DNA from: Macrostomum hystrix
Taxonomy: Eukaryota > Animalia > Platyhelminthes
DNA: 64,000 bases
Assembly: GCA_950097015.1 (NCBI GenBank)
Contig: CATNEN010000034.1
Location: forward strand, 6,262,001-6,326,000
Reading direction: 5' to 3'
The notes under the pieces were generated by a model. That model was given only the letters and a program-made list of their open reading frames with translations. It was not told the DNA's origin and searched no databases. The number at the start of each line of letters is the position of its first letter. Within the stretch, counting starts at the first letter, position 1. Positions 41,682 through 64,000 of this stretch are shown here, in pieces. Position numbers and translations under genes: made by a program.

Positions 41682-44378
41682 TCACGCAATGCTTGCGTAC
41701 GTCTCCATTTTGACTTTGACCTTGGAGAAGCCCAATCGGCGGGTCAGATCTTCGGCCCGCATCTGCGTGTAGGCGCGTCGGCTGGCGGCCAGGTGGCCGG
41801 ACTTCAAGTAGACGGAGGCGGCCGGCCCGGCTGTAGCCAGGAGCAGCCCGTGATGCCGCTGGTTGTTGAGACGGAGGAATCTGGTGGCCCAGGCGCGCAG
41901 GAGGACGGCCTCAATCAGCAGGCTCTGATTGGCCTCACAGAGTAGCGACATCAGGTGAAAGTCGGTAGTGAGGAAGCCGGGCAACAGGTGGAAGCTGACA
42001 TCTCGAACGCGATGCACCTGGAGTTGCGATTTTATTAAAATAATCGCGTCAGCTCATCATATAAAAAAATGAATGGAATTCAAAATGGGATCGATACACG
42101 TGAGTAGATTTCGGATCGGCATAGAATAGAAAAAAAATGAAGGTAGAAAGGCTCTAAAAATCTACGAATTTTCTGCCCCTCTATTTCTATTTCTATTTCA
42201 CCTCAAATATTACAATCGATCGCGTGCCGTGAAGCACATTTTTTGAGAGCGATTGCTCAGGCCAACTGCTCCGACATCAACAGCTTCCGGGTTGAGTCCC
42301 TGTACAATGCTCAAGGAGTCTGGGGGGATGTGGGAGAAGCTAAATGAGTCTGCTACAGTATCACACTTCTCCAGTGCAGAGGGCCTGAATGAGTCACAGA
42401 TTTCTGAGTCACGCAGGACAGACACTGCAGACATTACAGATACTACAGACATTACAGACACTGCAGACATTACAGATGCTACAGACATTGCACATACTAC
42501 AGACATTGCACATACTACAGACATTACACATACTACAGACATTACAGATACTACAGACATTACAGATGCTACAGATATTACAGATGCTACAGACATTGCA
42601 CATACTACAGACATTGCACATACTACAGACATTAAAGATACTGCAGACACTACAGACATTAAAGATACTGCAGACACTACAGACATAACATATACTACAG
42701 AAATGACAGGACCTCGTGTCTGTAGAAGCTAAGCGCTATCAGTTTGATGAAGCCGGCAAAGAAGCTGGCCTCCATGTAGGCGTCCTCCTTGAAGGCCAGT
42801 CGCGACTGAGCGAAACGCAGCCAGGTGAAGCCGGCCTGGCCCGTGGCTCCGACAGCTGAACCGGCAGCCAGGCCCAGCAGAGCCCAGTTGGACCAGGCGC
42901 TGAGCAGCTGAGGGCAGACAATCGATGGCAGTCCGCCAGTCTGATGGCAGACTCGTTCGGCGGGAAACGGCGCCGGCGAGACGGCGAGGCAGCAGACGAG
43001 AGCGCAGGCGGTTATCGCCAGGCACTGGCCAGCGAGACTCGCCGCCTGCTTAGCCGCCCAGGATCTGCAAAGCCGGCCGGAGTTCTGCCAGTCCGCCAGG
43101 CTGTGTCCGAGGCTCCAGTCGACTCGGCCGGCCTCCGAGCTGCAGAGTCGAGCGGCGCAGCCGGCTGAGAAGCCGCTGTCGGGCATCGCTGCGCAATTAC
43201 CGGGCTGCGAGTCGGCGATCTCGCTAACGTAGGGGCGTTGATAGGAGAGATTCTGTATGAGATTAGATGTTAATAGATGAGATTCTGTATGAGATTGGAT
43301 GTTAATAGGTGAGATTCAGTATGAGATTGGATGCCGAAAGTGAGATTCTGTATGAGATTGGATGCTTATAGGTGAGATTCTGTATGAGATTGGATGCTGA
43401 ATGTTGAGATTCTGTATGAGATTGGATGCTGAATGTTGAGATTCAGTATGAGATTGGATGCTGATAGGTGAAATTCTGTATGAGATTAGATGCAAAAGGT
43501 GAGAAACTGTATGAGATTGGATGTTGAAATTTGAGATTCTGTATGTGAAATATGTGAAATTTGAAATTTAAGATATCGCATTAGAAAAATATAGAATAAA
43601 AAAGGATTCCCAAATCAGTTGGGTCAGATGTGCAGCCAGTGACACAGCGCAGCTATTGCACAGTGGCTTCCAAAGGCTGTGTACAGCTTGTCCAGTCCGT
43701 GGACTGGGGGAGGTCGCCACACTTACCCGAACTCCTGCCCCAGCTAATGCTGGCACCAACTTTCAGCTTGGCAAACTTAACCCACTAGAGCATCAAGTGT
43801 CTTGCTGATGTGTACAAATAGCTAAATTTGGGTCGAGATTCGAACCCATGACCTCTCATATTCAGATGTCCAAAGCTCTGAGCACTGGGCTACTAATACT
43901 CTTATATAAGCCCTAATGAAATATATGATTAAATCAAGATTTTGCTTTGTAGAAAATATTAACAATTGAGATCTTCCATGAGATGTGATTGGACTGCTAA
44001 CCTCACAGCCAGCCGCACGAATTGCCTGATCTCGCTCTGGACCAACAGTAGATCCCGCCTGAGCTGCGGACCCGCCGTCAGCTGCCACCACAGCTGCGGC
44101 AGCCACATCAGGCCGGCGTAGGCAAGCAGCGCAGTCGCTAGGTCGCGAGTTCGTGTTCCCACCGGCTGCTGCAGGTGGCACATCTGGCTGACAAATAGGA
44201 CCTGGGCAGCGCTGGCATTGCGATGGAGTTGGCATGCTCCAGGTGCGGTCGCGAGTTCGAGTCCAAACAGACTAATCGATAGAGTGAGTGGCCAGAACAC
44301 TGAGAATAGTTTGGCCAGGTGGTCTGGCAACAGCTCAATGCGAAAATTTGAGTAGTCGTCCAGGTAACCGCATGACAT
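41682..44378 (-). CDS. Pannexin/innexin-family channel, 407 aa, pannexin-like; exons 44378-44002, 43223-42713, 42017-41682
   Basis: Splice phases 2 and 0 are compatible. Four hydrophobic segments, two Cys per extracellular loop (GAC-x17-C; RVC...IVC). Motifs FRIELLPDHL, LMWLPQLWWQLTAGPQLRRDLLLVQSE and TDFHLMSLLCEAN align by eye to PANX1 [37 protein letters not shown] and NDLSLYNLFLEEN. Confidence 0.8.
42415..42705. repeat. 18-bp minisatellite (ACAGACATTGCACATACT)n, pannexin-like intron 2
   Basis: Direct periodicity starting just inside the donor. Confidence 0.93.
43245..43550. repeat. Degenerate ~30-bp minisatellite (GAGATTCTGTATGAGATTGGATG...)n
   Basis: About 10 diverged copies next to the acceptor at 43224. 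Confidence 0.88.
43600..43894 (-). mobile_element. tRNA-derived SINE (family B) in pannexin-like intron 1
   Basis: Minus-strand head TAGCCCAGTG...GGGTTCGAATCTCGACCC (A/B boxes), then CAAGACACTT and the CCCAGTCCACGGACTG core shared with 407-422. Confidence 0.6.
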
Positions 44379-48128: not shown

Positions 48129-51100
48129 TTACACGTCGCTCTCCTGAACAGTGGCCATGCACGAAGCATTCACAGAGTTCTCGTCAACCGTTGTGTCGCC
48201 TTTGTTTAGACCCGTCTGTTGATAGATCGCATCATTAAGGAACTGCAATTTATATGTGCAGAGCAAGCGTATGATACCCCGAAACTTGGTATTTTAAATC
48301 AAAATTATTTACAATCAGCACGATCTGATTGGCCGGCAAAATGGGGTGGATGGTGAGGGCCGCAGCGAAGGAGTGGGATGTGTCGGAGGCAGCGGTATTG
48401 GAGTGAGGTTGGTGTCGGGGGTATGCGGCGAAGGAGTGAGGTGGGTGCTGTTGTGCCCGTAGCGGAGTGAGGTGGATGTTGGGGTGGCCCGCAGTTAGGG
48501 AATAAGGTGGAAGTCAGGGCCACACCTCTACAACTGTTGCTTAACACACGACTAGTCTGCCGCTGGCTTCAGGCACGACTCACCACTCACCAGACAGTCT
48601 CACCACTGTATGCTTAACAAAGCGCTTATTTGTAAGGGAAATTCTCTAGAACATAAAAAATATTCTTCTGTAGAAATAGTTAGAAGCCGAAGTACCGAAA
48701 GAAATTTTTTATGGAAAACAATTTAGAAGAAAAAATACAAGGCAAAATTTTCAACATATCTGACAAAACAAAGAATTTAAGTACTAACAAAATGTTTTAG
48801 AATAGCCAAAGCAATTTGAGTATTTAAAGTTTTTAAACATGTACAGTTATAGAGAAGAAATCTATTCTAGATAGGTACTTAAAGAGGCTATAAAGAAAAC
48901 AATTAAGACGTAAATGCTTTCCATGTTAATAACTGACCAGACTATACATACCGGATGTATGCTCTTTACTTACTCATTGTTGATCGGCCTTCATATTTAA
49001 GGGTCGTTTTAGCATGGTTATAATAATATCGCTCACAGCATCCTTTTCTAGCTTTTAAATACTCCTACTCTGCAAACCCAGTTCAATAGCTAATCCCTCA
49101 CCGACTCATCCGCGGCGTCGCCATCGCCCGAGATGACCAAATTTCGTCGAGTTATTCTAGTCTCGCGACGAACCTCGGGCACGCCGTTAATCTGTTGAGT
49201 TTTAGTATGAAAAAAATAAATTTAGCAGCAAAGTGCGGAGTGGCGTGGCGCAAGCGGCGGAGGAGTGAGGTGGGTGTCAGAGGCTCGCGGAGGAGTGAGG
49301 TGGATGTCAGGGCTCGGAGAGGAGGAGTGAGGTGGGTGTCTGAAGCCCGCGGCAGACGAGTCGTGTGTTGGGCAACAGTTGTAGAGAAGTGAGGTGGGTG
49401 TCAGAGGCTAGCGGAGGAGGAGTGAGGTGGGTGTCTGAAGCTAGCGGAGGAGGAGGAGCTAAGGAGATAGGTGTTGGACAACAGTTGTTGAGGAGTGGGG
49501 TAGGTAGGTGTTAGCCGCATTCGGTGGAGCAGGAAAATTCACATTCAATTGGAAACATGAACCAAGATCTTTCTCCACTCTCACTCACAGTTCTCTCTAG
49601 AAGAGGGCCACCATCGGCGCCCTGGCCACCGCCGTGACTGTCGAAACAGGGCGGGCCGTGGGTTGCGTGCGACTCCACCACCTTGTTGGTGATGACTTTG
49701 CGCACTTGACGCCGCCGCACCACCTTCTTGGTGATCCGGCTGCCGTGCTCGTCAGTGAAGGTCATCACCTCTTCCTCGGGCTCGCCGATTTCTTCGCTCT
49801 AAATTTGAGCGGAATAAAATAGTAGCTCTGTTAACCTATTGCCTCTAAGTCTCACCTGTCCTTATTAAAGTCACTCTCAGTCTCACCTGTTAACTTCCCT
49901 GTCTCACCTGTTAACTTCCCTGTCTCACCTGTAAACTTCCCTGTCTCACCTTTTAACTTTCCTGTCTCACCTACTACGTTACAGCAAAACACTCGTAAAA
50001 AACGGTGAACGAATCTAATAAGCTTAGTAACAAAGTATTGCGCATAAAAACAAGGTATCAACTGTGCGAGCGAGCCCTACGTGGGTGACGTAAGTCTTCT
50101 CAGTTGGCTGCATGTCCAGGTGATGGTGATGACTGGGGTAGCTGTCCCTGGCGCAGCAGTCCATGGGCACGGTGGGTATGGCCATCGGCTTGGCTAGCGA
50201 ATCGTCATCCAGGCAGTAGTCTTCGGGTCGCTTTGTAATATGAGAAAGAAAAATATGATTCAAGTATTGATATTTCTAGTCTATATTGTCATTCGCCTAC
50301 TAGTGAGCATGCAATACACTACTTAGAGTAGGTGACTTAAAATTGCGAATCGAGTTTGTAATATAATTATATAGTGTGCTCAACATGGCCATATGTGACA
50401 TGTTTGTATTGCAAATTCTGTGCGAACCAATCAATAGCGAACCACACCTACTCACTACACTACCTGACTTTAGTTTATCACCTCGGTACCCCAGTCTCCC
50501 TTAACTCAGTCTCCCTCACCCAGTCTCCCTCACCACAGTCTCCCTCAACCCAGTCTCCCTCAACCCAGTCTCCCTCACCTCAGTCTCCCTCACCTCAGTC
50601 TCCCTCACCACAGTCTCCCTCAACCCAGTCTCCCTCACCCCAATCTCCCTCACCTCAGTCTCCCTCACCTCAGTCTCCCTCACCTCAGTCTCCCTCACCT
50701 CAGTCTCCCCCACCCCAGTCTCCCTCAACCCAGTCTCCCTCACCCCAATCTCCCTCAACCCAATCTCCCTCACCTCAGTCTCCCTCACCACAGTCTCCCT
50801 CAACCCAGTCTCCCTCACCCCAATCTCCCTCACCTCAGTCTCCCTCACCACAGTCTCCCTCAACCCAGTCTCCCTCACCCCAATCTCCCTCACCTCAGTC
50901 TCCCTCACCTCAGTCTCCCTCACCCCAATCTCCCTCACCTCAGTCTCCCTCACCTCAGTCTCCCTCACCCCAGTCTCTCTCACCCCAGTCTCCCTCACCC
51001 CAGTCTCCCTCACCCCAATCTCCCTCACCCCAGTCTCCCTCACCACAGTCTCCCTCAACCCAGTCTCCCTCACCCCAATCTCCCTCACCTCAGTCTCCCT

Positions 51101-54100
51101 CACCCCAGTCTCCCTCACCTCAGTCTCCCTCACCTCAGTCTCCCTCACCCCAGTCTCTCTCACCCCAGTCTCCCTCACCCCAGTCTCCCTCACCCCAATC
51201 TCCCTCACCCCAGTCTCCCTCACCACAGTCTCCCTCAACCCAGTCTCCCTCACCCCAATCTCCCTCACCTCAGTCTCCCTCACCCCAGTCTCTCTCACCC
51301 GTCTCCCTCAACCCAGTCTCCCTCACCTCAGTCTCCCTCACCTCAGTCTCCCTCATCCCAGTCTCTCTCAACTCAGTCTCCCTCACCTCAGTTCGGGTCT
51401 CCCGCACAGAGACGGTCGGTTCGCCGCTCTCCATGAAGCCGCCGCGCAGCCGCCCAGCGAACTGCTGGCGGTGGTCTCGCACCTGATCGCTGCGCTGATC
51501 CACCGAAGGCTGCAATTCGTTAAAAAATTAGTTTTTTATGCTTTGACGTTTTTTCTAAAGTCAAATCGATGAACTCCAAGCGCTTGATAGATGCAGACTA
51601 ACTAATGGAGTATTGTCACGCGAAATATTTATCAGTCAACCAACAGGAACCGAAGGGTACAAGGGAGAAACACAGGCAGAGATGAAAAATAAGGAAATTA
51701 ATAATCTGGGACTAGACAGGCCAAATGAAACCTGATTCCAGCTAAGAGAAAATTTTTACGATCCCTTGTGATGGGGCGTGTCTACACATTGGGTTTGCCA
51801 CCCAACCATCACCGCACGAGCTGGGTCATGGACTATTGTACAGAGATTTTTTATGAGCAATGAGGGAATAGACTTTATCTAACGAATGAGCATAATGTAC
51901 TTAGAGTCCGTTATAACAACTGTTTAAAAGAGTTAAAGAAAATATTCAGATGAGAGAGTCAGATGAGAGTCAGATGAGAGAGTCAGATGAGAGAGTCAGA
52001 TAAGAGAGTCAGATGAGGGAGTCAGATGAGAGAGTCAGATTAGAGAGTCAGATAAGAGTCAGATGAGAGAGTCAGATGAGAGAGTCAGATAAGAGAGTCA
52101 GATGAGAGATGAGAGAGTCAGATGAGAGAGTCATATGAGAGAGTCAGATGAGAGAGTCAGATGAGAGAGTCAGATGAGAGAGTCAGGTGAGAGAGTCAGA
52201 TGAGAGTCAGATGAGAGAGTCAGGTGAGAGAGTCAGATGAGAGTCAGATGAGAGAGTCAGGTGAGAGAGTCAGATGAGAGAGTCAGATGAGAGAGTCAGA
52301 TGAGAGAGTCATATGAGAGAGTCAGATAAGAGAGTCAGATGAGAGAGTCAGATGAGAGAGTCAGATAAGAGAGTCAGATGAGAGAGTCAGATGAGAGAGT
52401 CAGATGAGAGAGTAAGATGAGAGAGTCAGATGAGAGAGTCAGGTGAGAGAGTCAGATGAGAGAGTCAGATGAGAGAGTCAGGTGAGAGAGTCAGATGAGA
52501 GAGTCAGATGAGAGAGTCAGATGAGAGAGTCAGATGAGAGAGTCAAATGAGAGAGTCAGATGAGAGAGTCAGATGAGAGAGTTAGATGAGAGAGTCAGAT
52601 GAGAGAGTCAAATGAGAGAGTCAGATGAGAGAGTCAGATGAGAGAGTCAGATGAGAGAGTCAGACAGAGGATAAATTCAAGCCCGCATATGTATTTGCTA
52701 CCCCACTTAGGCCTCACCCTCTGTTGCTGCTGCTGCTGCTGCTCGTCATTAGACACCTGGGACAATCTGCTCTTCTAAAATGGTTTCCAAGTATATACAT
52801 GGAGAAATAAAAGTGCAGCTCGGAATGTGGCGCAAATGCAAGAACAGGGCATGGAATCAGAACACAGAGAGTCACTCACCCGCTTGCTAAGGCTCTCCTG
52901 CAGCATTCTGGGGTCGGCGTAGGCAAAGCCTTTTGATTTGCGCTGCAATGTGAATTTTAAAAAATTATACTAGCTTGGCCATGCATTTTTGTAGAAAAAA
53001 AGTTGCAAATTCACTGCTTAAATTGCGAATTAACAATTATTAGCCAAGCTTTTGCTAGTTCTGCGCTCATTCATTTTAAATAATATCAAGAAAGTTGGTG
53101 CTAAAACATTTTTTCAGAAGAAAATTAAGCAAGAAAAATTAAAGTAAAAACTATTAGAAAAATCGGAATAAGAAAAAAAATTGTAATAGTGTCTAAGAAA
53201 TGTATATACGAGGCCTGTCCCAAAAGTAGTGTTACTTTTGATTATATCTTTTGTTCTGATGGTTCAAATAACGTGATTTTACACAGTCTTATAGCGGCAA
53301 GTCTCTTCTTTATATTAATTCAAATCTTTTTTCTAACAGACTAGGGAAATAGAAGTTATCAACGAAAAACTAACAGGACCTCAAACATAGACTTACAGTA
53401 AGTCTCGTAGCCCTCGTAAGCCCTCGTAAAAAGCGGGATTTCTAAAAGAGGCTGTTACGAATAAGGAATTTAAAATGAACTGCTCTAGAAAACGGGCGTT
53501 TTTAAGAACCACACTTACGGCAGTCTTAGAAACACACCAATGAAAGGTTTTAAAGAAACACTAAAAAATTAGGATCGAAAAAACTGATAATAAAATGGGT
53601 TTTTAATAAACATACACAACAAGAGGTTTCTAAGAAACACGAATAATAAATTTGTTTCTAAGAGACATAAAATAAAGTGGTTTCGAAAAAACAGAGTAAG
53701 AGGTTTTCCAAGAAACATACACAACAAAAGGTTTCCAAGAAACACGAATAATAAATATGTTTCCAAGAAACGCAGCTACGGTAGATTATTTAAAAAAAGA
53801 ATTTACGAGACAGGCTTCTAAGCACCCCACATAACAGAGATGTTTCTAAGAAACACATGAAGGGTAAATATTCTTCCATTTCTAAGAAACGTACGAGCCA
53901 AACCCAAAAACTGAAACAAAAAGTTACTCACATCGGCAGCCCCTGTTCGGCCGCTACGTCGCACAGCCTCCTCGCTGGCCAAGCCGACCGCTGTCCAGGC
54001 AGGACCTGGCGGATAACGAAATGCCCTCTGGCCGAAGTTCACATCCACAGTCTGGTCGCGAACGCACACGGTAGGATAGTAGGCGTCGCTGACACGAGCG

Positions 54101-57100
54101 GCAGGCGGCAGCGAGTAGGCCTGGCCCAGCGACTGGCCATTCTTGGCGAACGCCACCGTGCCGGTGCCCAAGTCCAGGTAGCAGCCGACTACATCGCCGC
54201 CGTTGAAGGGCTCGCCGTAGACGTCGATCTGATCGTTGTGCATTTTCTTGCCCTGAGACCCGGCCAGCCCGAAGCCGTCTGGATCGGCGCCGTAGGCCCA
54301 GCCGTGCTGGTCACGACCGGCGTCCAGGCTGCCCGACTCGGTGGTCCAGCCAGCTCTGGTCAGGCCCGAAGAATGCGACTCCAGCGGCTCCACCTAGGGT
54401 TTGGGTGAGCACACGCTTGGCCATTTCCATTCACATCTTAAATTTCACCCTTAGTCTCACTGCTGCACCCTTCATCTCACTGCTGCACCTTCATCTCAAT
54501 GCTGCACCCTTCATCTCACTGCTGCACCCTTCATCTCACTGCTGCACCCTTCATCTCACTGCTGCACCCTTCATCTCAATGCTGCACCCTTCATCTCACT
54601 GCTGCACCCTTCATCTCACTGCTGCACCCTTCATCTCAATGCTGCACCCTTCATCTCACTGCTGCACCCTTCATCTCACTGCTACACCCTTCATCTCACT
54701 GCTGCACCCTTCATCTCACTGCTGCACCCTTCATCTCACTGCTGCATCATTCATCTCACTGCTGCATCATTCATCTCACTGCTGCACCCTTCATCTCACT
54801 GCTGCACCCTTCATCTAAGCATCCCACCCTTCATCTTGCAACGGTTATTGTAGACAAACCTCGTAGTAGAATCGGCCTGAACCGGCCACAGGCCGCACAC
54901 CCTTGGCTGCCCGCACTCCCTGCCAGCCGAAGCCAAGCCTGCCCTGCGCCGACGCTCCGTCCGGTCCCAGCGCCATGCCCGGCCCGGTGACGTCATACTG
55001 ATTTAGTCGCCAAGCTTTGGGATTATCTGCGCGCTGATTGACCGGCGCGAGGCCGACCGGGCGCCACGGGCCGCCGGGCAGGTGAAGCAGCGGACTGGCC
55101 GGATTGTCGCCGAAGTTCCAGCGCAGGATGGCGCCGTTTCTGGCGCAGGCCGCCGGGAAGAAGGTCTCGGACCGCATCTCCCTGGCGGATGAGAGGTGGA
55201 GGGGTTGAGTCAAGCTGCCATAGAGTTTGGTGGGTCAAGCTACCATAGATTTTGGTGGGTCAAGCTGCCATAGAGTTTGGTGGGTCAGGCTGCCATAGAG
55301 TTTGGTGGGTCAAGCTGCCATAGAGTTTGGTGGGTCAAGCTGCCATAGAGTTTGGTGGGTCAAGCTGCCATAGAGTTTGGTAGGTCAAGCTGCCATAGAG
55401 TTTAGTGGGTCAAGCTGCCATAGAGTTTGGTGGGTCAGGCTGCCATAGAGTTTGGTGGGCCAGGCTGCCATAGAGTTTGGTGGGTCAAGCTCCCATAGAG
55501 TTTGGTGGGTCAAGCATCAGTTGTGTTAAGCTTTAGTTGGTAAGTCTCGACCAAATATTGTACAGATATTTTGCACAAAACTTTATTGTACTGAAATATC
55601 TTCAAATTAACCCAAAGTATTTATGTGCCAAACAATTCAATCTCACTTAGCTTAAAAAATCAAGCATTCACGGCCCAAGCATCATAATTAATATAAGTCA
55701 GACAGAAATAGTAAAATAACTCATTGACAATAATAATAAATAAATCATAAAAATAAAACTGATTTGCAGCTCTTGATTCAGTTGCTCAGATTTTAGATCT
55801 CGAATCATTAATCAGCTAGAATGCCAGATGATATACCAAAGAGCTATTCAGTAAAAGTACGGCATTTCATCACGGAAATGAGAATATATTAGCAAAAAAC
55901 CGCGTCTGTCGTTTAGAGGCTGGTGAGGGCAGTGTGAATAGGGGCCTATTTGGTAGGTGAATAGCTGGCAGTGAATGCTCTCTCACCTGGCCAAGCTGAA
56001 GGCCTGTCCCTGTTCCACCCCGTTGACGGAGTACAGCACGAGGCCGCTGTCCAGATCCAGAGCGGCTCCGACCACGTCGCCAGGCCGCAGCCGGCAGCCG
56101 TAGTCGTCTACCTGGCCTGCAGTGCATTTGGTGGCCTGGCGGCCGTCAGGGCCGGCGCCGAAGCCGAAGCCGTGCGCGTCGGCGACGCCCAGTCGCAGGC
56201 CGGCCGACGCTGTAGCCCAGCCTATGCGGGAATCGACATCGGCGGCGGCGTCGACTTTGCGACCATGCGGCAGGTCGACGACGACCTCGAAGTACCACTG
56301 GCCGCCGTTGCGGACGCCGGAGTCGGCCCGGCCGCCAAGCCAGTCAGCGCCAGGGCAGGCCAGCGTCAGCGGCGGAGATTGTCGTCTTTCGACATCGTCG
56401 CCGACAGCAACGGAGGCGCCGGAACCGTCAACGTCGGCGTCGAGAGGAGTAAGGAACCAACGCCGCGGCCGGATCGCGTCCAGCTCTGGCCGTCGATCCA
56501 GCTGTTCGCGAGCTTGAAGCGTCGACTGCTGCTGCTGCAGCTGCTGCTGATAGTCCATGGGTGTGCTCTGGGCCTGATGATAATAGGAGGCCGTGATGGC
56601 AGCGCTGCCGGTGCCGTTCAAGCCAGGCGCCGGTAAGTGCGACTCGTAGTTAAAAGCGTCCTCTGCAAATGACGAGCGAACTCAATTAAGCTCATGACCA
56701 CAGACTACTCAAGCTCATGACCACAGTCTACTAAAGCTCATGACCACAGTCTACTCAAGCTCATGACCTCAGTCTACTCAAGCTCATGACCTCAGTCTAC
56801 TCAAGCTCATGACAAGTCTACTCAAACTCATGACCTCAGTCTACTCAAACTCATGACCTCAGTCTACTCAAGCTCATGACCTCAGTCTACTCAAACTCAT
56901 GACCTCAGTCTACTCAAACTCATGACCTCAGTCTACTCAAACTCATGACCTCAGTCTACTCAAGCTCATGACCTCAGTCTACTCAAACTCATGACCTCAG
57001 TCTACTCAAGCTCATGACCTCAGTCTACTCAAGCTCATGACCTCAGTCTACTCAAGCTCATGACCTCAGTCTACTCAAGCTCATGAACTCAGTCTACTCA

Positions 57101-60100
57101 AACTCATGACCACATTCTACTCAAACTCATGACCACATTCTACTCAAACTCATGACCACATTCTACGCATTATCATGACCACAATAAACATAAACATATG
57201 ATCAGCCATGATCTTGGACGCTCAAAAAACCCAACTACCACAATAAACTCACTGTCGTGAGCATTGTGCTCACCTTTCTTGCGGAAACTCTTTCGCATGC
57301 CGGGCGTGATTAGGGCCTCCGGGTACGGGCCGAGAGTCTGATCATTTATCTGGCCCCTGGTTGGCCCAGTATAGTTCCAGTTGCGCTTGAATGTGCCAGG
57401 AATGAGCGGCTTGGCTGGCTTCTCTGGCGACTTCAGCCTGAAATCAATCATAGAAGATGTCTCTGTGTTTAGCTGCTGCTCATTGAAAACTATAAGATAG
57501 AGTCATAGACGATTGAAGGGGAATTGCGTCATGCAAACTGTAGCTAGTCATTTTTATAGAGAATATAATAAAATAAGGGCTTAAAATGACGGATATGAGA
57601 GAATGAAGATCTGGGATAATGAGGATCTGGGAAAAGAGGATCTGGGAGAATGAGGAACTGGGAGGATTAGGATATGGAAGAATGAGGATCTGCAATAATA
57701 AGGATCTGGGAGAATTGGGATCTGGGAGAATGAGGAACTGGGGAGGATAAGGATCTGGGAGAATGAGGATCTGGAAGAATGAGGATCTGGGAGAATGAGG
57801 ATCTGGGAGAATCATCCCATTTGAGAAGAATGAGTCTATGTAATTAGGAAGATATGAAGATGGAAGGGAAAAATCATTAGCCGAAGCTCACCTGAAGAAG
57901 CCGTGATGCTCAACCACTGCCCGCCAGAGCCGCTTGGCCAGCCGGCCCGAGGCGCATTTGAATTCCACAACTCGCTCGCCGCGCCAATCAGAATCGGCCG
58001 GCCGGAGGGCGATGCGTAGAGAGCAGCGCTTGTAGGACACTCGCATGATCTTTGGCCAGGAGAAGCGGTTGATGCGCAGGCTGTTGCGGTAGACCAGCAC
58101 TCCGCTGTGATAGACACCAACGTAGACTTCCTCGCCGCGGCAGTCGCGAGCTTCGTGCATGTCAACGCCGTACATGGCCAACTTTTTAGCGTTCTGCAGG
58201 AAGCGCAGATCGGCCTCCTCGGGGGTCATGCCGCTGTGCGTGCGGTGCAGCTCGCTCACCCGCTCCTGCAGCTCGCGATGGGCGCGGAACTCCTCGGGGC
58301 AGAAGGGGCAGTCCTGCAGTTCAGATGCAGAGCCAATTGGAGTCTAAGCAAGTCTATGCAAACGGCACTATTTAGATGACGAGGCTAAACCAAAGTCATA
58401 GTTACTCCTGCCATTTGCCTGAACGTGTTGACTTGAGATGGGAATGTGATATGGAATGGGATGTGAGATGGAATGGGGATGTGATATGGAATGGGGATGT
58501 GATATGGAATGGGGATGTTTAGAATACTTAGAATTTAGGACTACACAATCACACAGAGGGGATAAAACTATGATCTGGGGGAGCTGATTGAGCAGGTCAC
58601 TCAGTTTCAAGATCACTCCGTTTCTAGATCTATTTGTTTCTAGATCACTCCGTTTCTAGATCTATTTGTTTCTAGATCACTCTGTTTCTATTATAGATCA
58701 CTCCGTTTCTACATCACTCCGTCTTAAGTTACTAAATTTCTAGACCAGTCAATTTGTAGATCACTCCGTTTCTAGATCACTCCGTTTCTAGATCACTCCG
58801 TTTCTAGGTCACTCCGTTTCTTGATTAATCCGTTTCTAGATCACTACGTTACTAGATTACTCCGTTTCTTGATCACTCCGTTTCTTAATCACTCCGTTTC
58901 TTAATCACTCCGTTTCTAGATCACTCCGTTTCTAGATCACTCCGTTTCTAGATCACTCCGTTTCTAGATCACTCCGTTTCTAGATCACTCCGTTTCTAGA
59001 TCACTCCGTTTCTAGGTCACTCCGTTTCTAGATTAATCCGTTTCTAGATCACTCCGTTTCTAGATCAATTTGTTTCTAGATCACTCCGTTTCTAGATCAC
59101 TCCGTTTCTAGATCACTCCGTTTCTAGATTAATCCGTTTCTAGATCACTCCGTTTCTAGATCACTCCGTTTCTAGATCACTCCGTTTCTAGATCAATCCG
59201 TTTCTAGATCACTCCGTTTCTAGATCACTCCGTTTCTAGATCACTCCGTTTCTAGATCACTCCGTTTCTAGATTAATCCGTTTCTAGATCACTCCGTTTC
59301 TAGATCAATTTGTTTCTAGATCACTCCGTTTCTAGATCAATCCGTTTCTAGATCACTCCGTTTCTAGATCACTCCGTTTCTAGGTCACTCCGTTTCTAGA
59401 TCACTCCGTTTCTAGATCACTCCGTTTCTACATCACTCCGTCTTAAGTTACTAAATTTCTAGACCAGTCAATTTGTAGATCACTCCGTTTCTAGATCACT
59501 CCGTTTCTAGGTCACTCCGTTTCTAGGTCACTCCGTTTCTAGGTCACTCCGTTTCTAGGTCACTCCGTTTCTAGGTCACTCCGTTTCTAGGTCACTCCGT
59601 TTCTAGATTAATCCGTTTCTAGATCACTCCGTTTCTAGATCTGGGGGAGCTGGTTGAGCAAGAAGCTCTAATGTGAAGCATCCGGCGATTTCGTTGGAGC
59701 GGAGGAGGAGGGGTGGGCGCGACAGGCGGGCTGATTTGCATTCGTGTTGGCCCGGGGAGGGAAGAGGATATTATTATAAAAAAATCCCAATCCCATTTCG
59801 TCTCTTGAATTTGAAGAGACGACAGGAAAATTCCAATGAAACTTCGCGAGCAGAATTCATAAGTACAATTTTCAGCTAGATAAACTTGTATTCAGACTCC
59901 ACGCCAATTGAAAGTACTTTCTATGCAATCATAAAAATAGTATACGCATTCGGATGAACAGAATCTAGACAGAAAGAACCCGACAGCTCTGCTGATTGGG
60001 GTTGCAGAGAGCTGATGAAGCTAACTATTTTGTCAGACCCCTGCTCCACACGCCTGAGAGGAATCTTCATTTGGGAACAAAGCTAGCAAATGTACTCAAA

Positions 60101-61752
60101 GGCACACTCTGAGAGCCACTTACTCAGCTATGAAGAAAAAGCTTATGACACTCAAGAGACAAGTTTTATTTAACTTTCTGCTAACAAACCAACAAAGAAC
60201 CCATACCCACTTTCCTAAATTGTTGATGTGCAGTTTTGATGTCACTGGCTCACACAATCACTATGTCACATCATCTTTTGAGTCCTTCTTTTCGAAAGGC
60301 ACATTGTCCTTAAGTTTTTCTGTCTTAAGTCACTCCGTCTATAAGTCACTTTGCTTTAAGTCCCAATGTCTCGAAGTCAGTTAATAGACACTTCATTTCA
60401 AGGTCAGTCCGTCTATAAGTTACTCAATTTCTAGATCAATTAATTTGTAAATCACTCTGTTTCTATATCACTAAGTTTCTAGATCACTCCGTTTCTAGAT
60501 CAATCCGTTTCTAGATCACTCCGTTTCTAGATCACTCCGTTTCTAGATCAATCCGTTTCTAGATCACTCCGTTTCTAGATCACTCCGTTTCTAGATCACT
60601 CCGTTTCTACACCACTCCGTCTTAAGTTACTAAATTTCTAGACCAGTCAATTTGTAGATCATTCCGTTTCTAGATCACTCCGTTTCTAGATCACTCCGTT
60701 TCTAGATCACTTCGTTTCTAGATCACTCCGTTTCTAGGTCATTCCGTTTCTAGGTCACTCCGTTTCTAGATCACTCCATTTCTAGATCAATTTATTTCTA
60801 GATCACTCCGTTTCTAGGTCACTCTGTTTCTAGATCACTCCGTTTCTACATCACTCCGTCTTAAGTTACTAAATTTCTAGACCAGTCAATTTGTAGATCA
60901 CTCCGTTTCTAGATCACTCCGTTTCTAGATCACTCCGTTTCTAGATCACTTCGTTTCTAGATCACTCCGTTTCTAGGTCATTCCGTTTCTAGGTCACTCC
61001 GTTTCTAGATCACTTCGTTTCTAGATCAATTTGTTTCTAGATCACTCCGTTTCTAGGTCACTCTGTTTATAGATCACTCCGTTTCTAGATCACTCCGTTT
61101 CTACATCACTCCATCTAAGGTTACTATATTTCTAGACCAGTCAATTTGTAGATCACTCCGTTTCTAGATCACTCCGTTTCTAGGTCACTCCGTTTCTAGA
61201 TTAATCCGTTTCTAGATCACTCCGTTACTAGATTACTCCGTTTCTTGATCACTCCGTTTCTAGATCACTCCGTTTCTAGATCACTCCGTTTCTAGATCAC
61301 TCCGTTTCTAGATCACTCCTTTTCTAGATTAATCCGTTTCTAGATCACTCCGTTTCTAGATCACTCCGTTTCTAGATCACTCCGTCTTAAGTTACTAAAT
61401 TTCTAGATCAGTCAATTTGTAGATCACTCCGTTTCTAGATCACTCTATTTCTAGGTCACTTCGTCAAAAATTCACTCCATCTGCAAGTCTGATGCAAAAA
61501 CGAAGGATCGCGCCCTCACCTGCAGATAGGTGAGGTCGCCAACCCTGGCATTAGTTAGGTCGTGGTCGCCAATTTCGGATTGCACAACATAGCTGCCCAG
61601 CACAATGTAGGTGGTGAACGAGCACGGCAGGATGTCGGCCATGAGGTTCTGGCGAATCTGCAGCGCCATGTAGTACCGGGTGAGGTTGTCGCGCAGATTC
61701 TCCGGGTCGGGCGGGTAGAACTTCACCATGAACTCCAGCTTCCATTCGTTCT
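48129..61752 (-). CDS. EPB41: Protein 4.1/coracle-family FERM protein with two internal DDX1-type SPRY domains, 5' part outside the window; exons 61752-61520, 58313-57892, 57437-57253, 56662-55987, 55181-54860, 54393-53932, 52942-52880, 52774-52718, 51509-51387, 50230-50081, 49798-49589, 49191-49102, 48242-48129
   Basis: FERM-M (VKFYPPDP...[10 protein letters not shown]...LPCSF...[12 protein letters not shown]), FERM-C (LAMYGVDMH...INRFSWPKI...[16 protein letters not shown]), FA region, two SPRY domains and a 4.1-CTD-like end ([14 protein letters not shown]...LNDAI). All 12 GT-AG junctions are phase-compatible, giving ~1034 continuous codons. The small downstream exons are less certain than the FERM and SPRY exons. 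Confidence 0.8.
49225..49500. repeat. Degenerate (GGAGTGAGGTGGGTGTC...)n repeat; related copies at 48330-48500
   Basis: The same core occurs in two adjacent introns of the 4.1-like gene. Confidence 0.7.
49850..49975. repeat. 21-bp minisatellite (TTAACTTCCCTGTCTCACCTG)n
   Basis: Five to six copies. Confidence 0.88.
50488..51390. repeat. 15-bp minisatellite (CAGTCTCCCTCACCT)n; minus-strand unit ACTGAGGTGAGGGAG contains a splice donor
   Basis: About 60 units continuous with the exon 51509-51387 / donor 51386 junction. Confidence 0.96.
51945..52665. repeat. 13-bp minisatellite (GATGAGAGAGTCA)n
   Basis: Direct periodicity. Confidence 0.96.
53932..55181 (-). CDS. Two exons (55181-54860, 54393-53932) encoding the end of SPRY 1 and all of SPRY 2 (DDX1-type)
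   Basis: FFPAAC...LRWNFG closes SPRY 1. WRLNQYD...ALGPDG...WQGVRAAKG...RFYYE|V...RAGWTT...[16 protein letters not shown]...[25 protein letters not shown]...YPTVC...VNFG...FRYPP is SPRY 2. Confidence 0.9.
54455..54820. repeat. 20-bp minisatellite (TCATCTCACTGCTGCACCCT)n
   Basis: Fills intron 54394-54859 inside SPRY 2. Confidence 0.95.
55210..55516. repeat. 25-bp minisatellite (CAAGCTGCCATAGAGTTTGGTGGGT)n
   Basis: Direct periodicity next to the acceptor at 55182. Confidence 0.95.
55987..56662 (-). CDS. Exon encoding most of SPRY domain 1 (DDX1-type) of the 4.1-like gene
   Basis: WLGGRADSG...QWYFEV...RIGWAT...GFGFG...DDYG...[28 protein letters not shown]; phase 1 in, phase 2 out. Confidence 0.88.
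56690..57180. repeat. 23-bp minisatellite (AAGCTCATGACCTCAGTCTACTC)n
   Basis: Fills intron 56663-57252. Confidence 0.95.
57600..57815. repeat. ~16-bp minisatellite (GAGAATGAGGATCTGG)n
   Basis: Degenerate periodicity; the reverse complement carries CTCCCAGATCCTCA. Confidence 0.88.
58594..59640. repeat. 16-bp minisatellite (GATCACTCCGTTTCTA)n, array 1
   Basis: XbaI/Sau3AI-rich unit, flanked by a 23-bp direct repeat. Confidence 0.95.
60330..61465. repeat. 16-bp minisatellite (GATCACTCCGTTTCTA)n, array 2
   Basis: Same unit and same ~50-bp variant block as array 1, ~700 bp away in the same intron. Confidence 0.95.
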
Positions 61753-62479
61753 CTGCTCGGTGGGTGGCAGGGAGGCGAGAATGGATTCGCTTTGAGCAAC
61801 CTATCCTTAAGCCGCAGCTAATCGTGCTACCCCCAATCTGGTACCCAATTTACAACTGGGTGAACTGAAGCGATGCGAACTAAAACCGATGGACAGAAAA
61901 AATATTGTGCCGCTATAAATCGAGGTCAATCAGTTTAAGCTCGCTGGAACCGATGAGTCATCGAGTCTTTCTCTGTAAGTAAGAAATGGCAAGACCCAGA
62001 AGCTGGTCGTCTTGGCAACAATAATCATAACAAACTAGAACATGCTTATTCTACAAGAGAATTATCTGAGGGGTTTCACAAGCTTTAAGCAAGAAACACA
62101 CAAAACTCGCCACTTGAACTGATTCACATTCGCGGAAAGAGAATTTTCCAAACAGAATTACAACTTGCCCAACATTCTTCACTCGCTATGTAGAAAAAAA
62201 ATAATTCTAATCAATGCAAAGTTTTTAAACCAGCCCCAGAACCCCCTTTAAGGCCACAACGATATCGGTTGGGGGTGATTGGATGCAGATGCAGTAAGGG
62301 AGATGAGAGAAAGGCTATAAAGTTTGGAAAGATTTCAATAATTTGTTTCGCATGCTTTTTAGCAATTTTTTTTTACTTTGCATTCGAAGAACGAAACAAT
62401 TTTTTAGTTGGTAAGCAAAGTCAGGTGAGACAAGCTTCTAAACCCAAAAATTAAAGCCCTTTCAATACCTCACAACTGT

Positions 62480-63600
62480 CTAATCTCTCACCTGTCTCAT
62501 ATCTCTCCTGTCTCATCTCTCGTCTGTCTCATCTCTCGTCTGTCTCGTCTCTTTTCTGTCTCGTCTCTCTCCATCTCATCTCTCTCCTGTCTCGTCTCTC
62601 TCCTGTCTCGTCTCTTTTCTGTCTCGTCTCTCTCCTATCTCCTCTCTCTCCTGTCTCGTCTCTCTCCTGTCTCGTCTCTCTCCTGTCTCATCTCTCTCCT
62701 GTCTCGTCTCTCTCCTATCTCATCTCTCTCCTGTCTCATCTCTCTCCTGTCTCGTCTCTCTCCTGTCTCGTCTCTCTCCTGTCTCATCTCTCTCCTGTCT
62801 AATCTCTCTCCTGTCTCATCTCTCTCCTGTCTTATCTCTTTCCTGTCTAATCTCTCTCCTGTCTCATCTCTCTCCTGTCTTATCTCTCTCCTGTCTCATC
62901 TCTCTCCTGTCTTATCTCTCTCCTGTCTCGTCTCTCTCCTGTCTCATCTCTCTCCTGTCTTATCTCTCTCCTGTCTCATCTCTCTCCTGTCTAATCTCTC
63001 TCCTGTCTCATCTCTCTCCTGTCTTATCTCTCTCCTGTCTCATCTCTCTCCTGTCTTATCTCTCTCTTGTCTCATCTCTCTCCTGTCTTATCTCTCTCCT
63101 GTCTTATCTCTCTCCTGTCTCATCTCTCTCCTGTCTTATCTCTCTTCTGTCTCATCTCTCTCCTGTCTAATCTCTCTCCTGTCTCATCTCTCTCCTGTCT
63201 CATCTCTCTCCTGTCTCATCTCTCTCCTGTCTCGTCTCTTTTCTGTCTCGTCTCTCTCCTATCTCATCTCTCTCCTGTCTTATCTCTCTCCTGTCTCGTC
63301 TCTCTCCTGTCTAATCTCTCTCCTGTCTCATCTCTCTCCTGTCTTATCTCTCTCCTGTCTCATCTCTCTCCTGTCTTATCTCTCTCCTGTCTCGTCTCTC
63401 TCCTGTCTCATCTCTTTCCTGTCTCATCGCTTTCCCAATCTCATCGCACACCCGCGTCTCGCATCTCTCCTGTCTAATCTCTCCTCTAATCTCTCCTCTA
63501 ATCTCTCCTCTAATCTCTCCTCTAATTTCTCCTCTAATTTCTCCTCTAATTTCTCCTCTAATCTCTCCTCTAATCTCTCCTCTAATCTCTCCTCTAATTT
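62480..63600. repeat. 16-bp pyrimidine-rich minisatellite (TCTCTCTCCTGTCTCA)n followed by 12-bp (TAATCTCTCCTC)n
   Basis: Direct periodicity; explains ORFs 63067-63477 and 63424-63609. Confidence 0.95.
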
Positions 63601-64000
63601 ACCCTGCAAAGCTGATCAAAATCAGTTGAATATATTTTAGAAAACAGAATACTTAAAATAATAACACGAAATAACCACAAAATGGTTTCGCCTTGCGCAG
63701 CTATTGTTGTCCGTAAGAACTGTGGCAAATCATAATAGTTATGCATAATATGCTTTTCAGTTATTCTATGACCCAGAAAACTGACAAGTTTAATGATAAA
63801 CAGTAGCGCAAAAGATACCCAGTTTAGGACAAGTTATTAAAGCTAAACAGAAGAGAAAGCCACGAAGCTGATTTTCAGCAATAGCAGCAGCAGCAGCATG
63901 GCATCGAGGTCTCGTGCACTTTTGTCATCGATATAGAAAAATAAGTGAAATACCAATGGAACAGTGCAGCAGTGAAAGTCTATTCTGAGGTGCTGGAGTG

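What the first reader, a model, noticed from the sequence alone, without database searches (positions are those of the whole stretch)
53932..57437. Protein 4.1/coracle gene with two frame-obligatory DDX1-type SPRY domains (FERM-FA-SPRY-SPRY-CTD)
Seen: three minus-strand exons encoding two SPRY domains lie between the FA exon and the exons leading to a 4.1-type C-terminal domain. The block is entered in phase 1 (57253 to 56662) and left in phase 0 (53932 to 52942), so skipping it would frameshift everything downstream. Known: 4.1/coracle proteins are FERM-FA-(SAB)-CTD, and I know of none with SPRY. The motifs WRLNQYD...ALGPDG...WQGVRAAKG...YYEV and [17 protein letters not shown] closely track the DDX1 helicase SPRY (WQMNPYD...AIGSDG...WHGCRATKG...YYEV; GCYLDIDKGHVKFSKNG). 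Inference: the DDX1 protein-interaction module was captured and duplicated into a membrane-cytoskeleton/septate-junction adaptor, a possibly undescribed architecture that could link the cortex to RNP or other partners.
Basis: partly seen in the sequence, partly recalled or inferred. Interest (0 to 1): 0.88.

Follow-up and report, generated by a model that had tools for sequence, protein, structure and literature searches.

The report
Flatworm protein 4.1 with twin SPRY
This is a real, expressed flatworm gene for the membrane-skeleton adaptor protein 4.1 that carries, in its middle, two copies of a binding domain derived from the RNA helicase DDX1; every flatworm 4.1 gene found in public databases has the same design, yet no paper found here describes it.

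Summary
Spliced RNA contigs from three runs join the FERM_C exon, the FA-like exon, the three SPRY exons and the downstream exons. In one run a single 2909-nt contig spans them all. One correction: the FA-like exon ends at 57274, not 57253 (same phase).

The FERM domain is of the 4.1/coracle type (48-51% identity to canonical 4.1). Both SPRY domains are DDX1-type: the best solved match is the human DDX1 SPRY, and in a tree the two copies form one clade inside the DDX1 SPRY group.

The "FA" and "CTD" labels are weak. Pfam finds neither, and profile comparison recovers only short remnants.

The architecture is not unique to this genome. About 30 flatworm protein clusters (Macrostomum, Schistosoma, Clonorchis, Fasciola, Echinococcus, Taenia, monogeneans) carry FERM plus two abutting SPRY domains. 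Their names are automatic, and some are wrongly called "DDX1". No flatworm 4.1-type protein without SPRY appeared, and no non-flatworm one with SPRY. Four literature searches found no description.

The scan has also noted a second copy on another piece of this genome (s1-300453).

Verdict: a real, phylum-wide variant of protein 4.1 that is catalogued in databases but undescribed. Its function is inferred, not shown.

The parts
61520..61752 (-). FERM_M exon. The 5' border is approximate (61752 or 61755). FERM_N and the N-terminus lie beyond the window end.
   Evidence: Pfam FERM_M E 9e-9. 77% identity to P0152 residues 183-261. The RNA contig's loose end at 58319 continues into this exon's 3' end. 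No FERM_N match was found in 61800-64000.
57892..58313 (-). Exon with the end of FERM_M and all of FERM_C
   Evidence: Pfam FERM_C E 1e-19 and FERM_M E 4e-7. RNA joint 57891/57436.
57274..57437 (-). FA-like exon (degenerate FERM-adjacent region). The real donor is at 57274.
   Evidence: RNA joints 57436/57891 and 57274/56662 in X2, X3 and X4. Pfam FA does not hit. hhalign against canonical FA: 30 columns, P 2e-5; reversed control P 0.5.
55987..56662 (-). Low-complexity linker plus most of SPRY domain 1
   Evidence: Pfam SPRY E 3e-9. RNA joints 56662/57274 and 55986/55180.
54860..55181 (-). End of SPRY 1 and start of SPRY 2 (the WRLNQYD and [10 protein letters not shown] motifs). The two domains abut with no linker.
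   Evidence: Spliced translation. RNA joints. HMM envelopes of the two domains meet at the same residue.
53932..54393 (-). Main part of SPRY domain 2
   Evidence: Pfam SPRY E 1e-19. Best PDB sequence match is DDX1 SPRY 4XW3, E 1.9e-28. RNA joints 54391/54858 and 53932/52942.
52880..52942 (-). Small exon, 21 codons, phase 0 to 0
   Evidence: RNA joints 52942/53932 and 52880/52774 in all four runs. 70% identity to P0152 residues 918-944.
52718..52774 (-). Small exon with a poly-Q run
   Evidence: The acceptor at 52774 is shown by RNA. The donor is inferred from GT and the frame.
51387..51509 (-). Tail exon. Its donor is followed by a minisatellite made of copies of that donor.
   Evidence: tblastn with P0152 residues 942-986. 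AG/GT borders and open frame. Tandem array at 50488-51392.
50081..50230 (-). Candidate 150-nt cassette exon (phase 0 to 0), absent from the M. lignano orthologues
   Evidence: AG/GT borders and open frame. Four runs of the RNA-like study P2 hold all of it. Its junctions were not checked.
49589..49798 (-). Conserved tail exon (TDEHG...ITKKVV motif)
   Evidence: 62% identity to P0152 residues 997-1041. The motif is shared by flatworm orthologues. Pfam 4_1_CTD does not hit.
49102..49191 (-). Tail exon ([16 protein letters not shown])
   Evidence: AG/GT borders and open frame. Its resemblance to the canonical ETRIEKR..ITGD motif was judged by eye only.
48129..48242 (-). Last coding exon with the [11 protein letters not shown] motif and the stop codon
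   Evidence: tblastn with P0152 and P0001. This motif is the only part of the tail that matches the canonical 4.1 CTD profile: 26 columns, P 8e-5; reversed control P 0.38.

Best explanation
The locus is one expressed gene: the flatworm (macrostomid-like) version of protein 4.1/coracle, a cortical membrane-cytoskeleton adaptor.

Shown:
- A 4.1-type FERM domain is followed in the same mRNA by a degenerate FA-like stretch, a linker, two directly abutting SPRY domains and a short tail that keeps only a remnant of the 4.1 C-terminal motif.
- Both SPRY domains descend from a DDX1-type SPRY.
- The layout is shared by flatworm 4.1-type genes from Macrostomum to schistosomes and tapeworms.

Inferred evolution: a DDX1-type SPRY was inserted into the variable region between FA and CTD of the 4.1 gene in a flatworm ancestor. 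It was duplicated in tandem before Macrostomorpha and Neodermata split. It then became obligatory while the canonical FA and CTD decayed.

Inferred mechanism:
- The FERM domain still docks the protein to membrane proteins and lipids at the cortex or at septate-type junctions.
- The twin SPRY forms a rigid protein-binding platform that takes over the partner recruitment done elsewhere by the CTD, and in vertebrates by the SAB.
- The partners are unknown.
For: One transcript:
- Spliced contigs in three runs have GT..AG joints. One 2909-nt contig spans FERM_C through the post-SPRY exons.
- All 13 in-window exons have AG/GT borders and one open frame down to a stop codon. The product is 60% identical and colinear with M. 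lignano PAA52686 residues 185-1123.
- A relative's complete 1088-aa FERM-SPRY-SPRY ORF sits uninterrupted on 3.5-kb contigs in two runs.

4.1 type:
- Every best non-flatworm match to the FERM region is a 4.1/coracle protein with Pfam FA and CTD, at 46-51% identity and E about 1e-95 to 1e-101.

DDX1 type:
- 58 of the roughly 150 best library hits to SPRY 2 also have a DEAD helicase part.
- By sequence, PDB 4XW3 scores E 1.9e-28, against 6e-11 for the next family, RyR.
- An AlphaFold model of the orthologous tandem (pLDDT 89.9, pTM 0.82) superposes on 4XW3 at TM 0.91-0.93 and rmsd 1.3-1.4 A.
- 78% of DDX1-conserved columns are kept, against 57% in multi-SPRY outgroups. These include DDX1-specific W, G, R and C positions.

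Single capture, then duplication:
- All first and second copies form one clade (SH-aLRT 98) inside the DDX1 group (95).
- Monophyly of the first copies is not rejected, p-AU 0.90.

Phylum-wide:
- About 30 flatworm clusters have FERM plus SPRY, and none of them has Pfam FA or CTD. All non-flatworm hits are canonical.

Rigid pair:
- There is no linker between the domains in any of the orthologues that carry two full-length SPRY domains.
- AFDB models of other members superpose across both domains at TM 0.85-0.94.
Against: - No functional data of any kind exist. Localisation, partners and the claim that the SPRY pair replaces CTD functions are all inference.
- Whether the SPRY clade is nested inside the DDX1 SPRYs or is their sister is not resolved (polytomy). 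The tree holds only the 150 best hits, so hnRNPU, RanBP9 and ASH2L SPRYs were excluded by score, not tested in the tree.
- The homologue searches are limited by length (0.55-1.75 times the query) and list only 120 rows. A short canonical flatworm 4.1 could have been missed.
- Planarians, polyclads and catenulids were not identified among the hits.
- The structure model is of the M. lignano orthologue, not of the window's own protein.
- The 5' end of the gene is outside the window.
Confidence: 0.85

Rival explanations
1. This gene is not the flatworm 4.1/coracle orthologue but a lineage-specific FERM paralogue that picked up SPRY domains. A canonical FERM-FA-CTD 4.1 exists elsewhere in flatworm genomes and does the classical job.
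For: The searches list only 120 rows and only proteins of 0.55-1.75 times the query length. Flatworms clearly have at least two FERM-SPRY paralogue groups, so the family has diversified.
Against: In two FERM-centred searches, every flatworm hit (about 30 clusters) carried SPRY and none carried Pfam FA or CTD. Canonical 4.1 proteins from molluscs, annelids, brachiopods, arthropods and chordates scored E 1e-79 to 1e-101. A canonical flatworm 4.1 should have scored in that range. The tail still keeps the 4.1 C-terminal motif.
Confidence: 0.1
2. The SPRY domains do not come from DDX1. They come from another SPRY family, or from an older shared ancestor, and the DDX1 likeness is retained ancestral similarity or convergence.
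For: The tree does not resolve whether the clade is nested within the DDX1 SPRYs or is sister to them. A DDX1-specific motif (G-T-x-K-K-S...F) is lost in both copies. Multi-SPRY kinases also score highly.
Against: Against solved structures, DDX1 SPRY outscores every other family by about 57 bits. The fold match is TM 0.91-0.93. The joint clade with DDX1 has support 95, with the multi-SPRY proteins outside it. DDX1-specific residues absent from the outgroup are kept in both copies.
Confidence: 0.07
3. The fusion is an artefact. The SPRY exons belong to a separate nested or neighbouring gene, and assemblers or gene predictors merged the two.
For: Logan contigs are assemblies and could in principle be chimeric. 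Some database models in this family are clearly mis-merged, for example the 2312-aa M. lignano entry that adds a kinase.
Against: Three independent runs give identical GT..AG joints across every intron from FERM_C through the SPRY exons. The frame is continuous. Uninterrupted full-length ORFs exist in transcript contigs of relatives. The same order is seen in about 30 species clusters.
Confidence: 0.02

Closest known systems
Protein 4.1 / coracle family (EPB41, EPB41L1-3, Drosophila Cora)
   Same: The FERM domain is 46-51% identical to canonical 4.1 proteins of many phyla. The FERM domain is followed by an FA-like stretch. The extreme C-terminus keeps a remnant of the CTD end motif.
   Different: Two SPRY domains fill the central region. 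Pfam FA, SAB and 4_1_CTD are not detected. No canonical 4.1 protein in the searches carries SPRY.
SPRY domain of the DEAD-box helicase DDX1 (PDB 4XW3; PMC4555926)
   Same: It is the closest sequence and fold relative of both SPRY copies. The N-terminal W-x-x-N-P-x-D motif, the W-x-G-x-R-A-x-K-G motif and other DDX1-conserved positions are shared.
   Different: Here the domain is not inserted in a RecA-like helicase core, and no DEAD or Helicase_C domain is present. It is duplicated in tandem. The DDX1 G-T-x-K-K-S motif is changed in both copies.
Database-only flatworm FERM-SPRY proteins, e.g. M. lignano PAA52686, C. sinensis 'Band 4.1-like protein 3', S. mansoni 'putative 4.1 G protein', E. 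multilocularis 'SPRY domain containing protein'
   Same: Same domain order, same abutting SPRY pair and same tail motifs. The window's product is 60% identical and colinear with PAA52686.
   Different: These are unreviewed automatic predictions in other species. Some are misnamed 'DDX1, partial'. No paper describing the architecture was found.
Other multi-SPRY proteins (ryanodine receptors; SPRY-repeat protein kinases such as Dictyostelium splA)
   Same: They carry several SPRY domains in one chain and are the next-best matches.
   Different: They fall outside the DDX1 plus flatworm clade. Their scores are much weaker. The host proteins are unrelated.

Membership tests
Protein 4.1 / coracle family | 4.1-type three-lobed FERM domain (FERM_N, FERM_M, FERM_C) | tested here: met
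   FERM_M and FERM_C are found in the window's exons. FERM_N lies outside the window but is present in the orthologues. The best non-flatworm matches are all 4.1/coracle proteins, at 46-51% identity and E about 1e-95 to 1e-101.
Protein 4.1 / coracle family | FERM-adjacent (FA) domain, Pfam PF08736 | tested here: inconclusive
   Pfam gives no hit even at E up to 10. hhalign of flatworm against canonical FA aligns 30 columns with P 2e-5; the reversed control gives 0.5. The core GSKFRYSGRT motif is altered.
Protein 4.1 / coracle family | C-terminal domain, Pfam PF05902 (4_1_CTD) | tested here: inconclusive
   Pfam gives no hit for the window's exons or for the tails of four orthologues. hhalign matches only the last 26-column motif, P 8e-5; the reversed control gives 0.38.
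Protein 4.1 / coracle family | Spectrin-actin binding domain, Pfam PF04382 (vertebrate members only) | tested here: not met
   It is absent from all flatworm members scanned. In the searches here it appeared only in vertebrate 4.1 proteins, so its absence does not exclude membership.
DDX1-type SPRY domain | SPRY fold closest to the DDX1 SPRY in sequence and structure | tested here: met
   Pfam SPRY hits twice. 4XW3 matches at E 1.9e-28 by sequence. The orthologue model matches 4XW3 at TM 0.91-0.93 and rmsd 1.3-1.4 A. The domains form a clade with the DDX1 SPRYs, support 95.
DDX1 helicase | SPRY inserted in RecA-like domain 1 of a DEAD-box core (PMC4555926) | tested here: not met
   No DEAD or Helicase_C domain is found in the window's gene or in any FERM-SPRY orthologue. 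Database names such as 'DDX1, partial' for these proteins are misnomers.
Flatworm FERM-SPRY-SPRY proteins (database group) | 4.1-type FERM, then two abutting DDX1-type SPRY domains, then a tail with the TDEHG and LN.AI..T.L motifs, all in one transcript | tested here: met
   RNA joints, full model, domain envelopes and tail motifs.

The most novel reading that the evidence does not exclude
In the flatworm stem lineage the whole protein 4.1/coracle lineage was rebuilt. A DDX1-derived double-SPRY platform became obligatory and the canonical FA and CTD partner sites decayed. Cortex and septate-junction or tegument assembly in all flatworms, including schistosomes and tapeworms, would then run through partners different from those in other animals. 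These partners might include proteins that normally bind the DDX1 SPRY, which would physically link the cell cortex to RNA-processing complexes.
Probability: 0.3. Interest if true: 0.7.

Novelty: new variant of a known kind. Interest (0 to 1): 0.5.

Why it matters
Protein 4.1/coracle is a core organiser of the membrane skeleton and of septate junctions in animals. If all flatworms use a version whose central and C-terminal partner sites are replaced by a DDX1-derived twin SPRY platform, three things follow.

- It is a clean, datable case of domain capture followed by tandem duplication in an essential scaffold.
- It predicts a different set of cortical partners in flatworms. This can be tested in Macrostomum or planarians.
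- It points to a parasite-specific feature of a tegument and junction scaffold in schistosomes, liver flukes and tapeworms.

It also exposes a recurring annotation error: flatworm FERM-SPRY proteins named "DDX1".

The find is moderate rather than major. The proteins already sit in public databases, and nothing yet shows what the SPRY pair binds.

Tried and rejected
- Pfam on single tail exons and on orthologue tails for 4_1_CTD and FA gave nothing, even at E up to 10.
- A relaxed tblastn for FERM_N exons in 61800-64000 gave only noise. The 5' end of the gene is outside the window.
- I tried to find a bona fide flatworm DDX1 by naming the best DDX1-like hits. That gave nematode, fish, mollusc and unnamed metagenome entries, plus one flatworm fragment of the FERM-SPRY family, but no flatworm helicase. 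AFDB hits named Ddx1 had their organisms masked. Whether a normal DDX1 is still present in flatworms therefore stays open.
- Four literature searches for FERM plus SPRY in flatworms gave no relevant paper.
- High-depth 'joints' such as 54305/56286 and 57942/58048 have 22-32 nt sides and non-canonical ends. I read them as partial matches of a more highly expressed paralogue, not as splicing.
- The window's own spliced protein could not be handed to the Pfam, structure or database tools, because it has no reference. Exons were scanned one at a time, and the M. lignano orthologue stood in for structure prediction.


Full report
**What is in the sequence**

On the minus strand the window holds a multi-exon gene. 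Pfam finds these domains in single exon translations:
- FERM_M in 61472-61729
- the end of FERM_M plus FERM_C in 57888-58259
- SPRY in 55983-56621 (E 3e-9)
- SPRY in 53818-54393 (E 1e-19)

Reading the sequence and splicing it in a script shows three exons: 56662-55987, 55181-54860 and 54393-53932. All have AG/GT borders. They join in one open frame with the upstream exon 57437-57274 and the downstream exon 52942-52880.

The first SPRY domain ends in the middle exon, and the second begins there with no linker.

**RNA evidence**

Four public runs were laid on 52600-58350. Contigs of X2, X3 and X4 (one study, same organism as the window) skip every intron with GT..AG ends. The joints are 57891/57436, 57274/56662, 55986/55180, 54858/54391, 53932/52942 and 52880/52774.

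In X3 one 2909-nt contig covers 58077-57891, all intermediate exons and 52942-52880, then runs on for about 1 kb. FERM_C, the FA-like exon, both SPRY domains and the following exons are therefore on one assembled transcript in three samples.

The only correction is that the FA-like exon ends at 57274, not 57253. Both donors are phase 1. No joint bypassing the SPRY block was seen.

**Full model inside the window**

Using the closest orthologue as a guide together with splice signals, I get 13 exons from 61752 to a stop codon at 48129. All have AG/GT borders and share one frame.
- The product is 977 aa, or 1027 aa with a candidate 150-nt cassette exon at 50081-50230.
- It is 60% identical and colinear with Macrostomum lignano PAA52686 residues 185-1123.
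- Four runs of the RNA-like study hold the candidate exon completely. Its junctions were not checked.
- FERM_N and the N-terminus are not in 61800-64000 and must lie beyond the window.

**The host gene**

The FERM plus FA-like region of the orthologue finds canonical protein 4.1/coracle proteins as its best non-flatworm matches. These come from brachiopods, annelids (including Platynereis Cora), molluscs, arthropods, amphioxus and vertebrates, at 46-51% identity and E about 1e-95 to 1e-101. All have Pfam FERM and FA, and most also 4_1_CTD. The FERM domain is therefore of the 4.1 type.

- Pfam FA and 4_1_CTD do not hit the window's exons or the tails of four orthologues, even at E up to 10.
- Flatworm against canonical FA: 30 columns align, P 2e-5; reversed control 0.5. 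The core GSKFRYSGRT motif is altered.
- Flatworm tails against canonical CTD: only the final 26-column motif aligns (D..aLn.AI..T.L..d..V), P 8e-5; reversed control 0.38.

These are remnants, not intact domains.

**The SPRY domains**

A search of 1.84 billion representative proteins with SPRY 2 gave flatworm FERM-SPRY proteins as the top hits. Next came SPRY-repeat kinases and many DDX1 helicases. 58 of the roughly 150 best hits have a DEAD helicase part.

- Against solved structures, the human DDX1 SPRY (4XW3) scores E 1.9e-28. The next families are RyR at 6e-11, RanBP10 at 1e-9 and ASH2L at 7e-6.
- In a maximum-likelihood tree of 85 SPRY domains, all first and second copies of the flatworm proteins form one clade (SH-aLRT 98). 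That clade sits inside a group with all DDX1 SPRYs (95). The multi-SPRY proteins fall outside.
- Whether the flatworm clade is nested in DDX1 or is its sister is unresolved.
- Holding all first copies together gives a better likelihood than the free quick tree, p-AU 0.90. One tandem duplication before the Macrostomum-Neodermata split is therefore the simplest history.
- Of 37 columns conserved in DDX1 SPRYs, both copies keep about 78%, against 57% in the outgroup. The kept positions include DDX1-specific W, G, R and C residues. A DDX1 G-T-x-K-K-S motif is changed in both copies.

**Structure**

An AlphaFold model of the orthologous tandem (30-sequence alignment) has pLDDT 89.9 and pTM 0.82.
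- It superposes on 4XW3 at TM 0.91-0.93 and rmsd 1.3-1.4 A.
- AFDB cluster models of other family members superpose over both domains at TM 0.85-0.94.
- The domains have no linker in any of the orthologues that carry two full-length SPRY domains.

Together these point to a rigid pair. The DDX1 SPRY is described as a putative protein-interaction platform with a conserved basic patch (PMC4555926). I could not map that patch here.

**Distribution**

FERM plus two SPRY domains occurs in:
- Macrostomum lignano (two paralogue groups)
- Trematodes: Clonorchis, Opisthorchis, Dicrocoelium, Echinostoma, Paragonimus, Fasciola, Calicophoron, Schistosoma (several species), Trichobilharzia, Heterobilharzia
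- Cestodes: Mesocestoides, Schistocephalus, Spirometra, Hymenolepis, Echinococcus, Taenia, Hydatigera
- Monogeneans: Cichlidogyrus, plus a SPRY-only fragment from Protopolystoma

In the FERM-centred search with the Clonorchis protein, all of the roughly 30 flatworm clusters carried SPRY and none carried Pfam FA or CTD. Every non-flatworm hit was canonical. Among the 150 best SPRY hits, only flatworm or unnamed Logan proteins had a FERM domain. A relative's full 1088-aa ORF lies uninterrupted on 3.5-kb contigs in two runs, so it is a transcript.

The names given by the sources are automatic: 'Band 4.1-like protein 3', 'putative 4.1 G protein', 'SPRY domain containing protein'. Two proteins that have FERM and SPRY but no helicase are called 'DDX1, partial'.

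Four full-text searches found no paper on this architecture. The scan itself has noted a second gene of this kind on another piece of the same genome (s1-300453). The high-depth partial matches of a paralogue seen fit that.

**Interpretation**

Shown:
- one transcript
- a 4.1-type FERM domain
- two abutting DDX1-type SPRY domains
- degenerate FA and CTD
- wide presence in flatworms

Inferred:
- a single capture in a flatworm ancestor followed by tandem duplication
- the SPRY pair works as a protein-binding platform that took over partner recruitment while the FERM domain keeps membrane docking

Not shown:
- localisation and binding partners
- any link to RNPs
- whether flatworms still have a normal DDX1
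- presence in planarians, polyclads or catenulids
- complete absence of a canonical 4.1 in flatworms (the searches are limited by length and by number of rows)

**Verdict**

It is not a one-off in this genome. It is the standard flatworm form of protein 4.1, already present in databases but apparently undescribed. I rate it a new variant of a known kind, with moderate interest.

Noticed in passing
window 49253-49455, 49880-49972, 50488-51392, 51946-52664, 53608-53771, 54446-54816, 55209-55515, 56688-57180, 57585-57812, 58597-59641, 60428-61464: Almost every intron of this gene holds its own minisatellite, with periods of 13-54 nt and up to 65 copies. The 16-nt arrays at 58597-59641 and 60428-61464 share one unit. 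The array at 50488-51392 starts right at the donor of exon 51509-51387 and repeats donor-like GGTGAGG units.
   Followed up: partly
database entries GAA30691.2 (P0003) and KAL3319268.1 (P0008): Two flatworm proteins are named 'ATP-dependent RNA helicase DDX1, partial' and 'DEAD box helicase 1, partial'. They have FERM and two SPRY domains but no helicase domain. The names were probably transferred through the SPRY similarity.
   Followed up: yes
window 50081-50230 (-): A candidate 150-nt cassette exon with phase 0 to 0, AG/GT borders and a His-rich product. It is absent from the M. lignano orthologues but held completely by four runs of the RNA-like study. Its junctions were not verified.
   Followed up: partly
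window 54244-54305, 56286-56307, 57903-57942, 58048: Contigs at 5-15 times higher depth match only short conserved stretches and continue into unlike sequence. They most likely come from a more highly expressed paralogue of this gene in the same organism. The scan noted a second FERM-SPRY gene on another piece (s1-300453).
   Followed up: no
P0167 (UniRef A0A1I8GXA5, M. lignano, 2312 aa): A member of the same 90% cluster is annotated as a protein kinase domain-containing protein and is twice as long. It is probably a gene model that merges the FERM-SPRY gene with a neighbouring kinase gene.
   Followed up: no
P0009, P0013 (Logan, 1720 and 1481 aa): Proteins with a kinase domain followed by six SPRY domains are the best non-flatworm, non-DDX1 matches to SPRY 2. 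They resemble Dictyostelium splA, which also appeared in the AFDB search.
   Followed up: no
window 41682-44378: The next gene downstream on the minus strand is the pannexin/innexin-like gene noted by another first-stage finding (s1-361133). It sets the 3' limit of the 4.1 locus.
   Followed up: no
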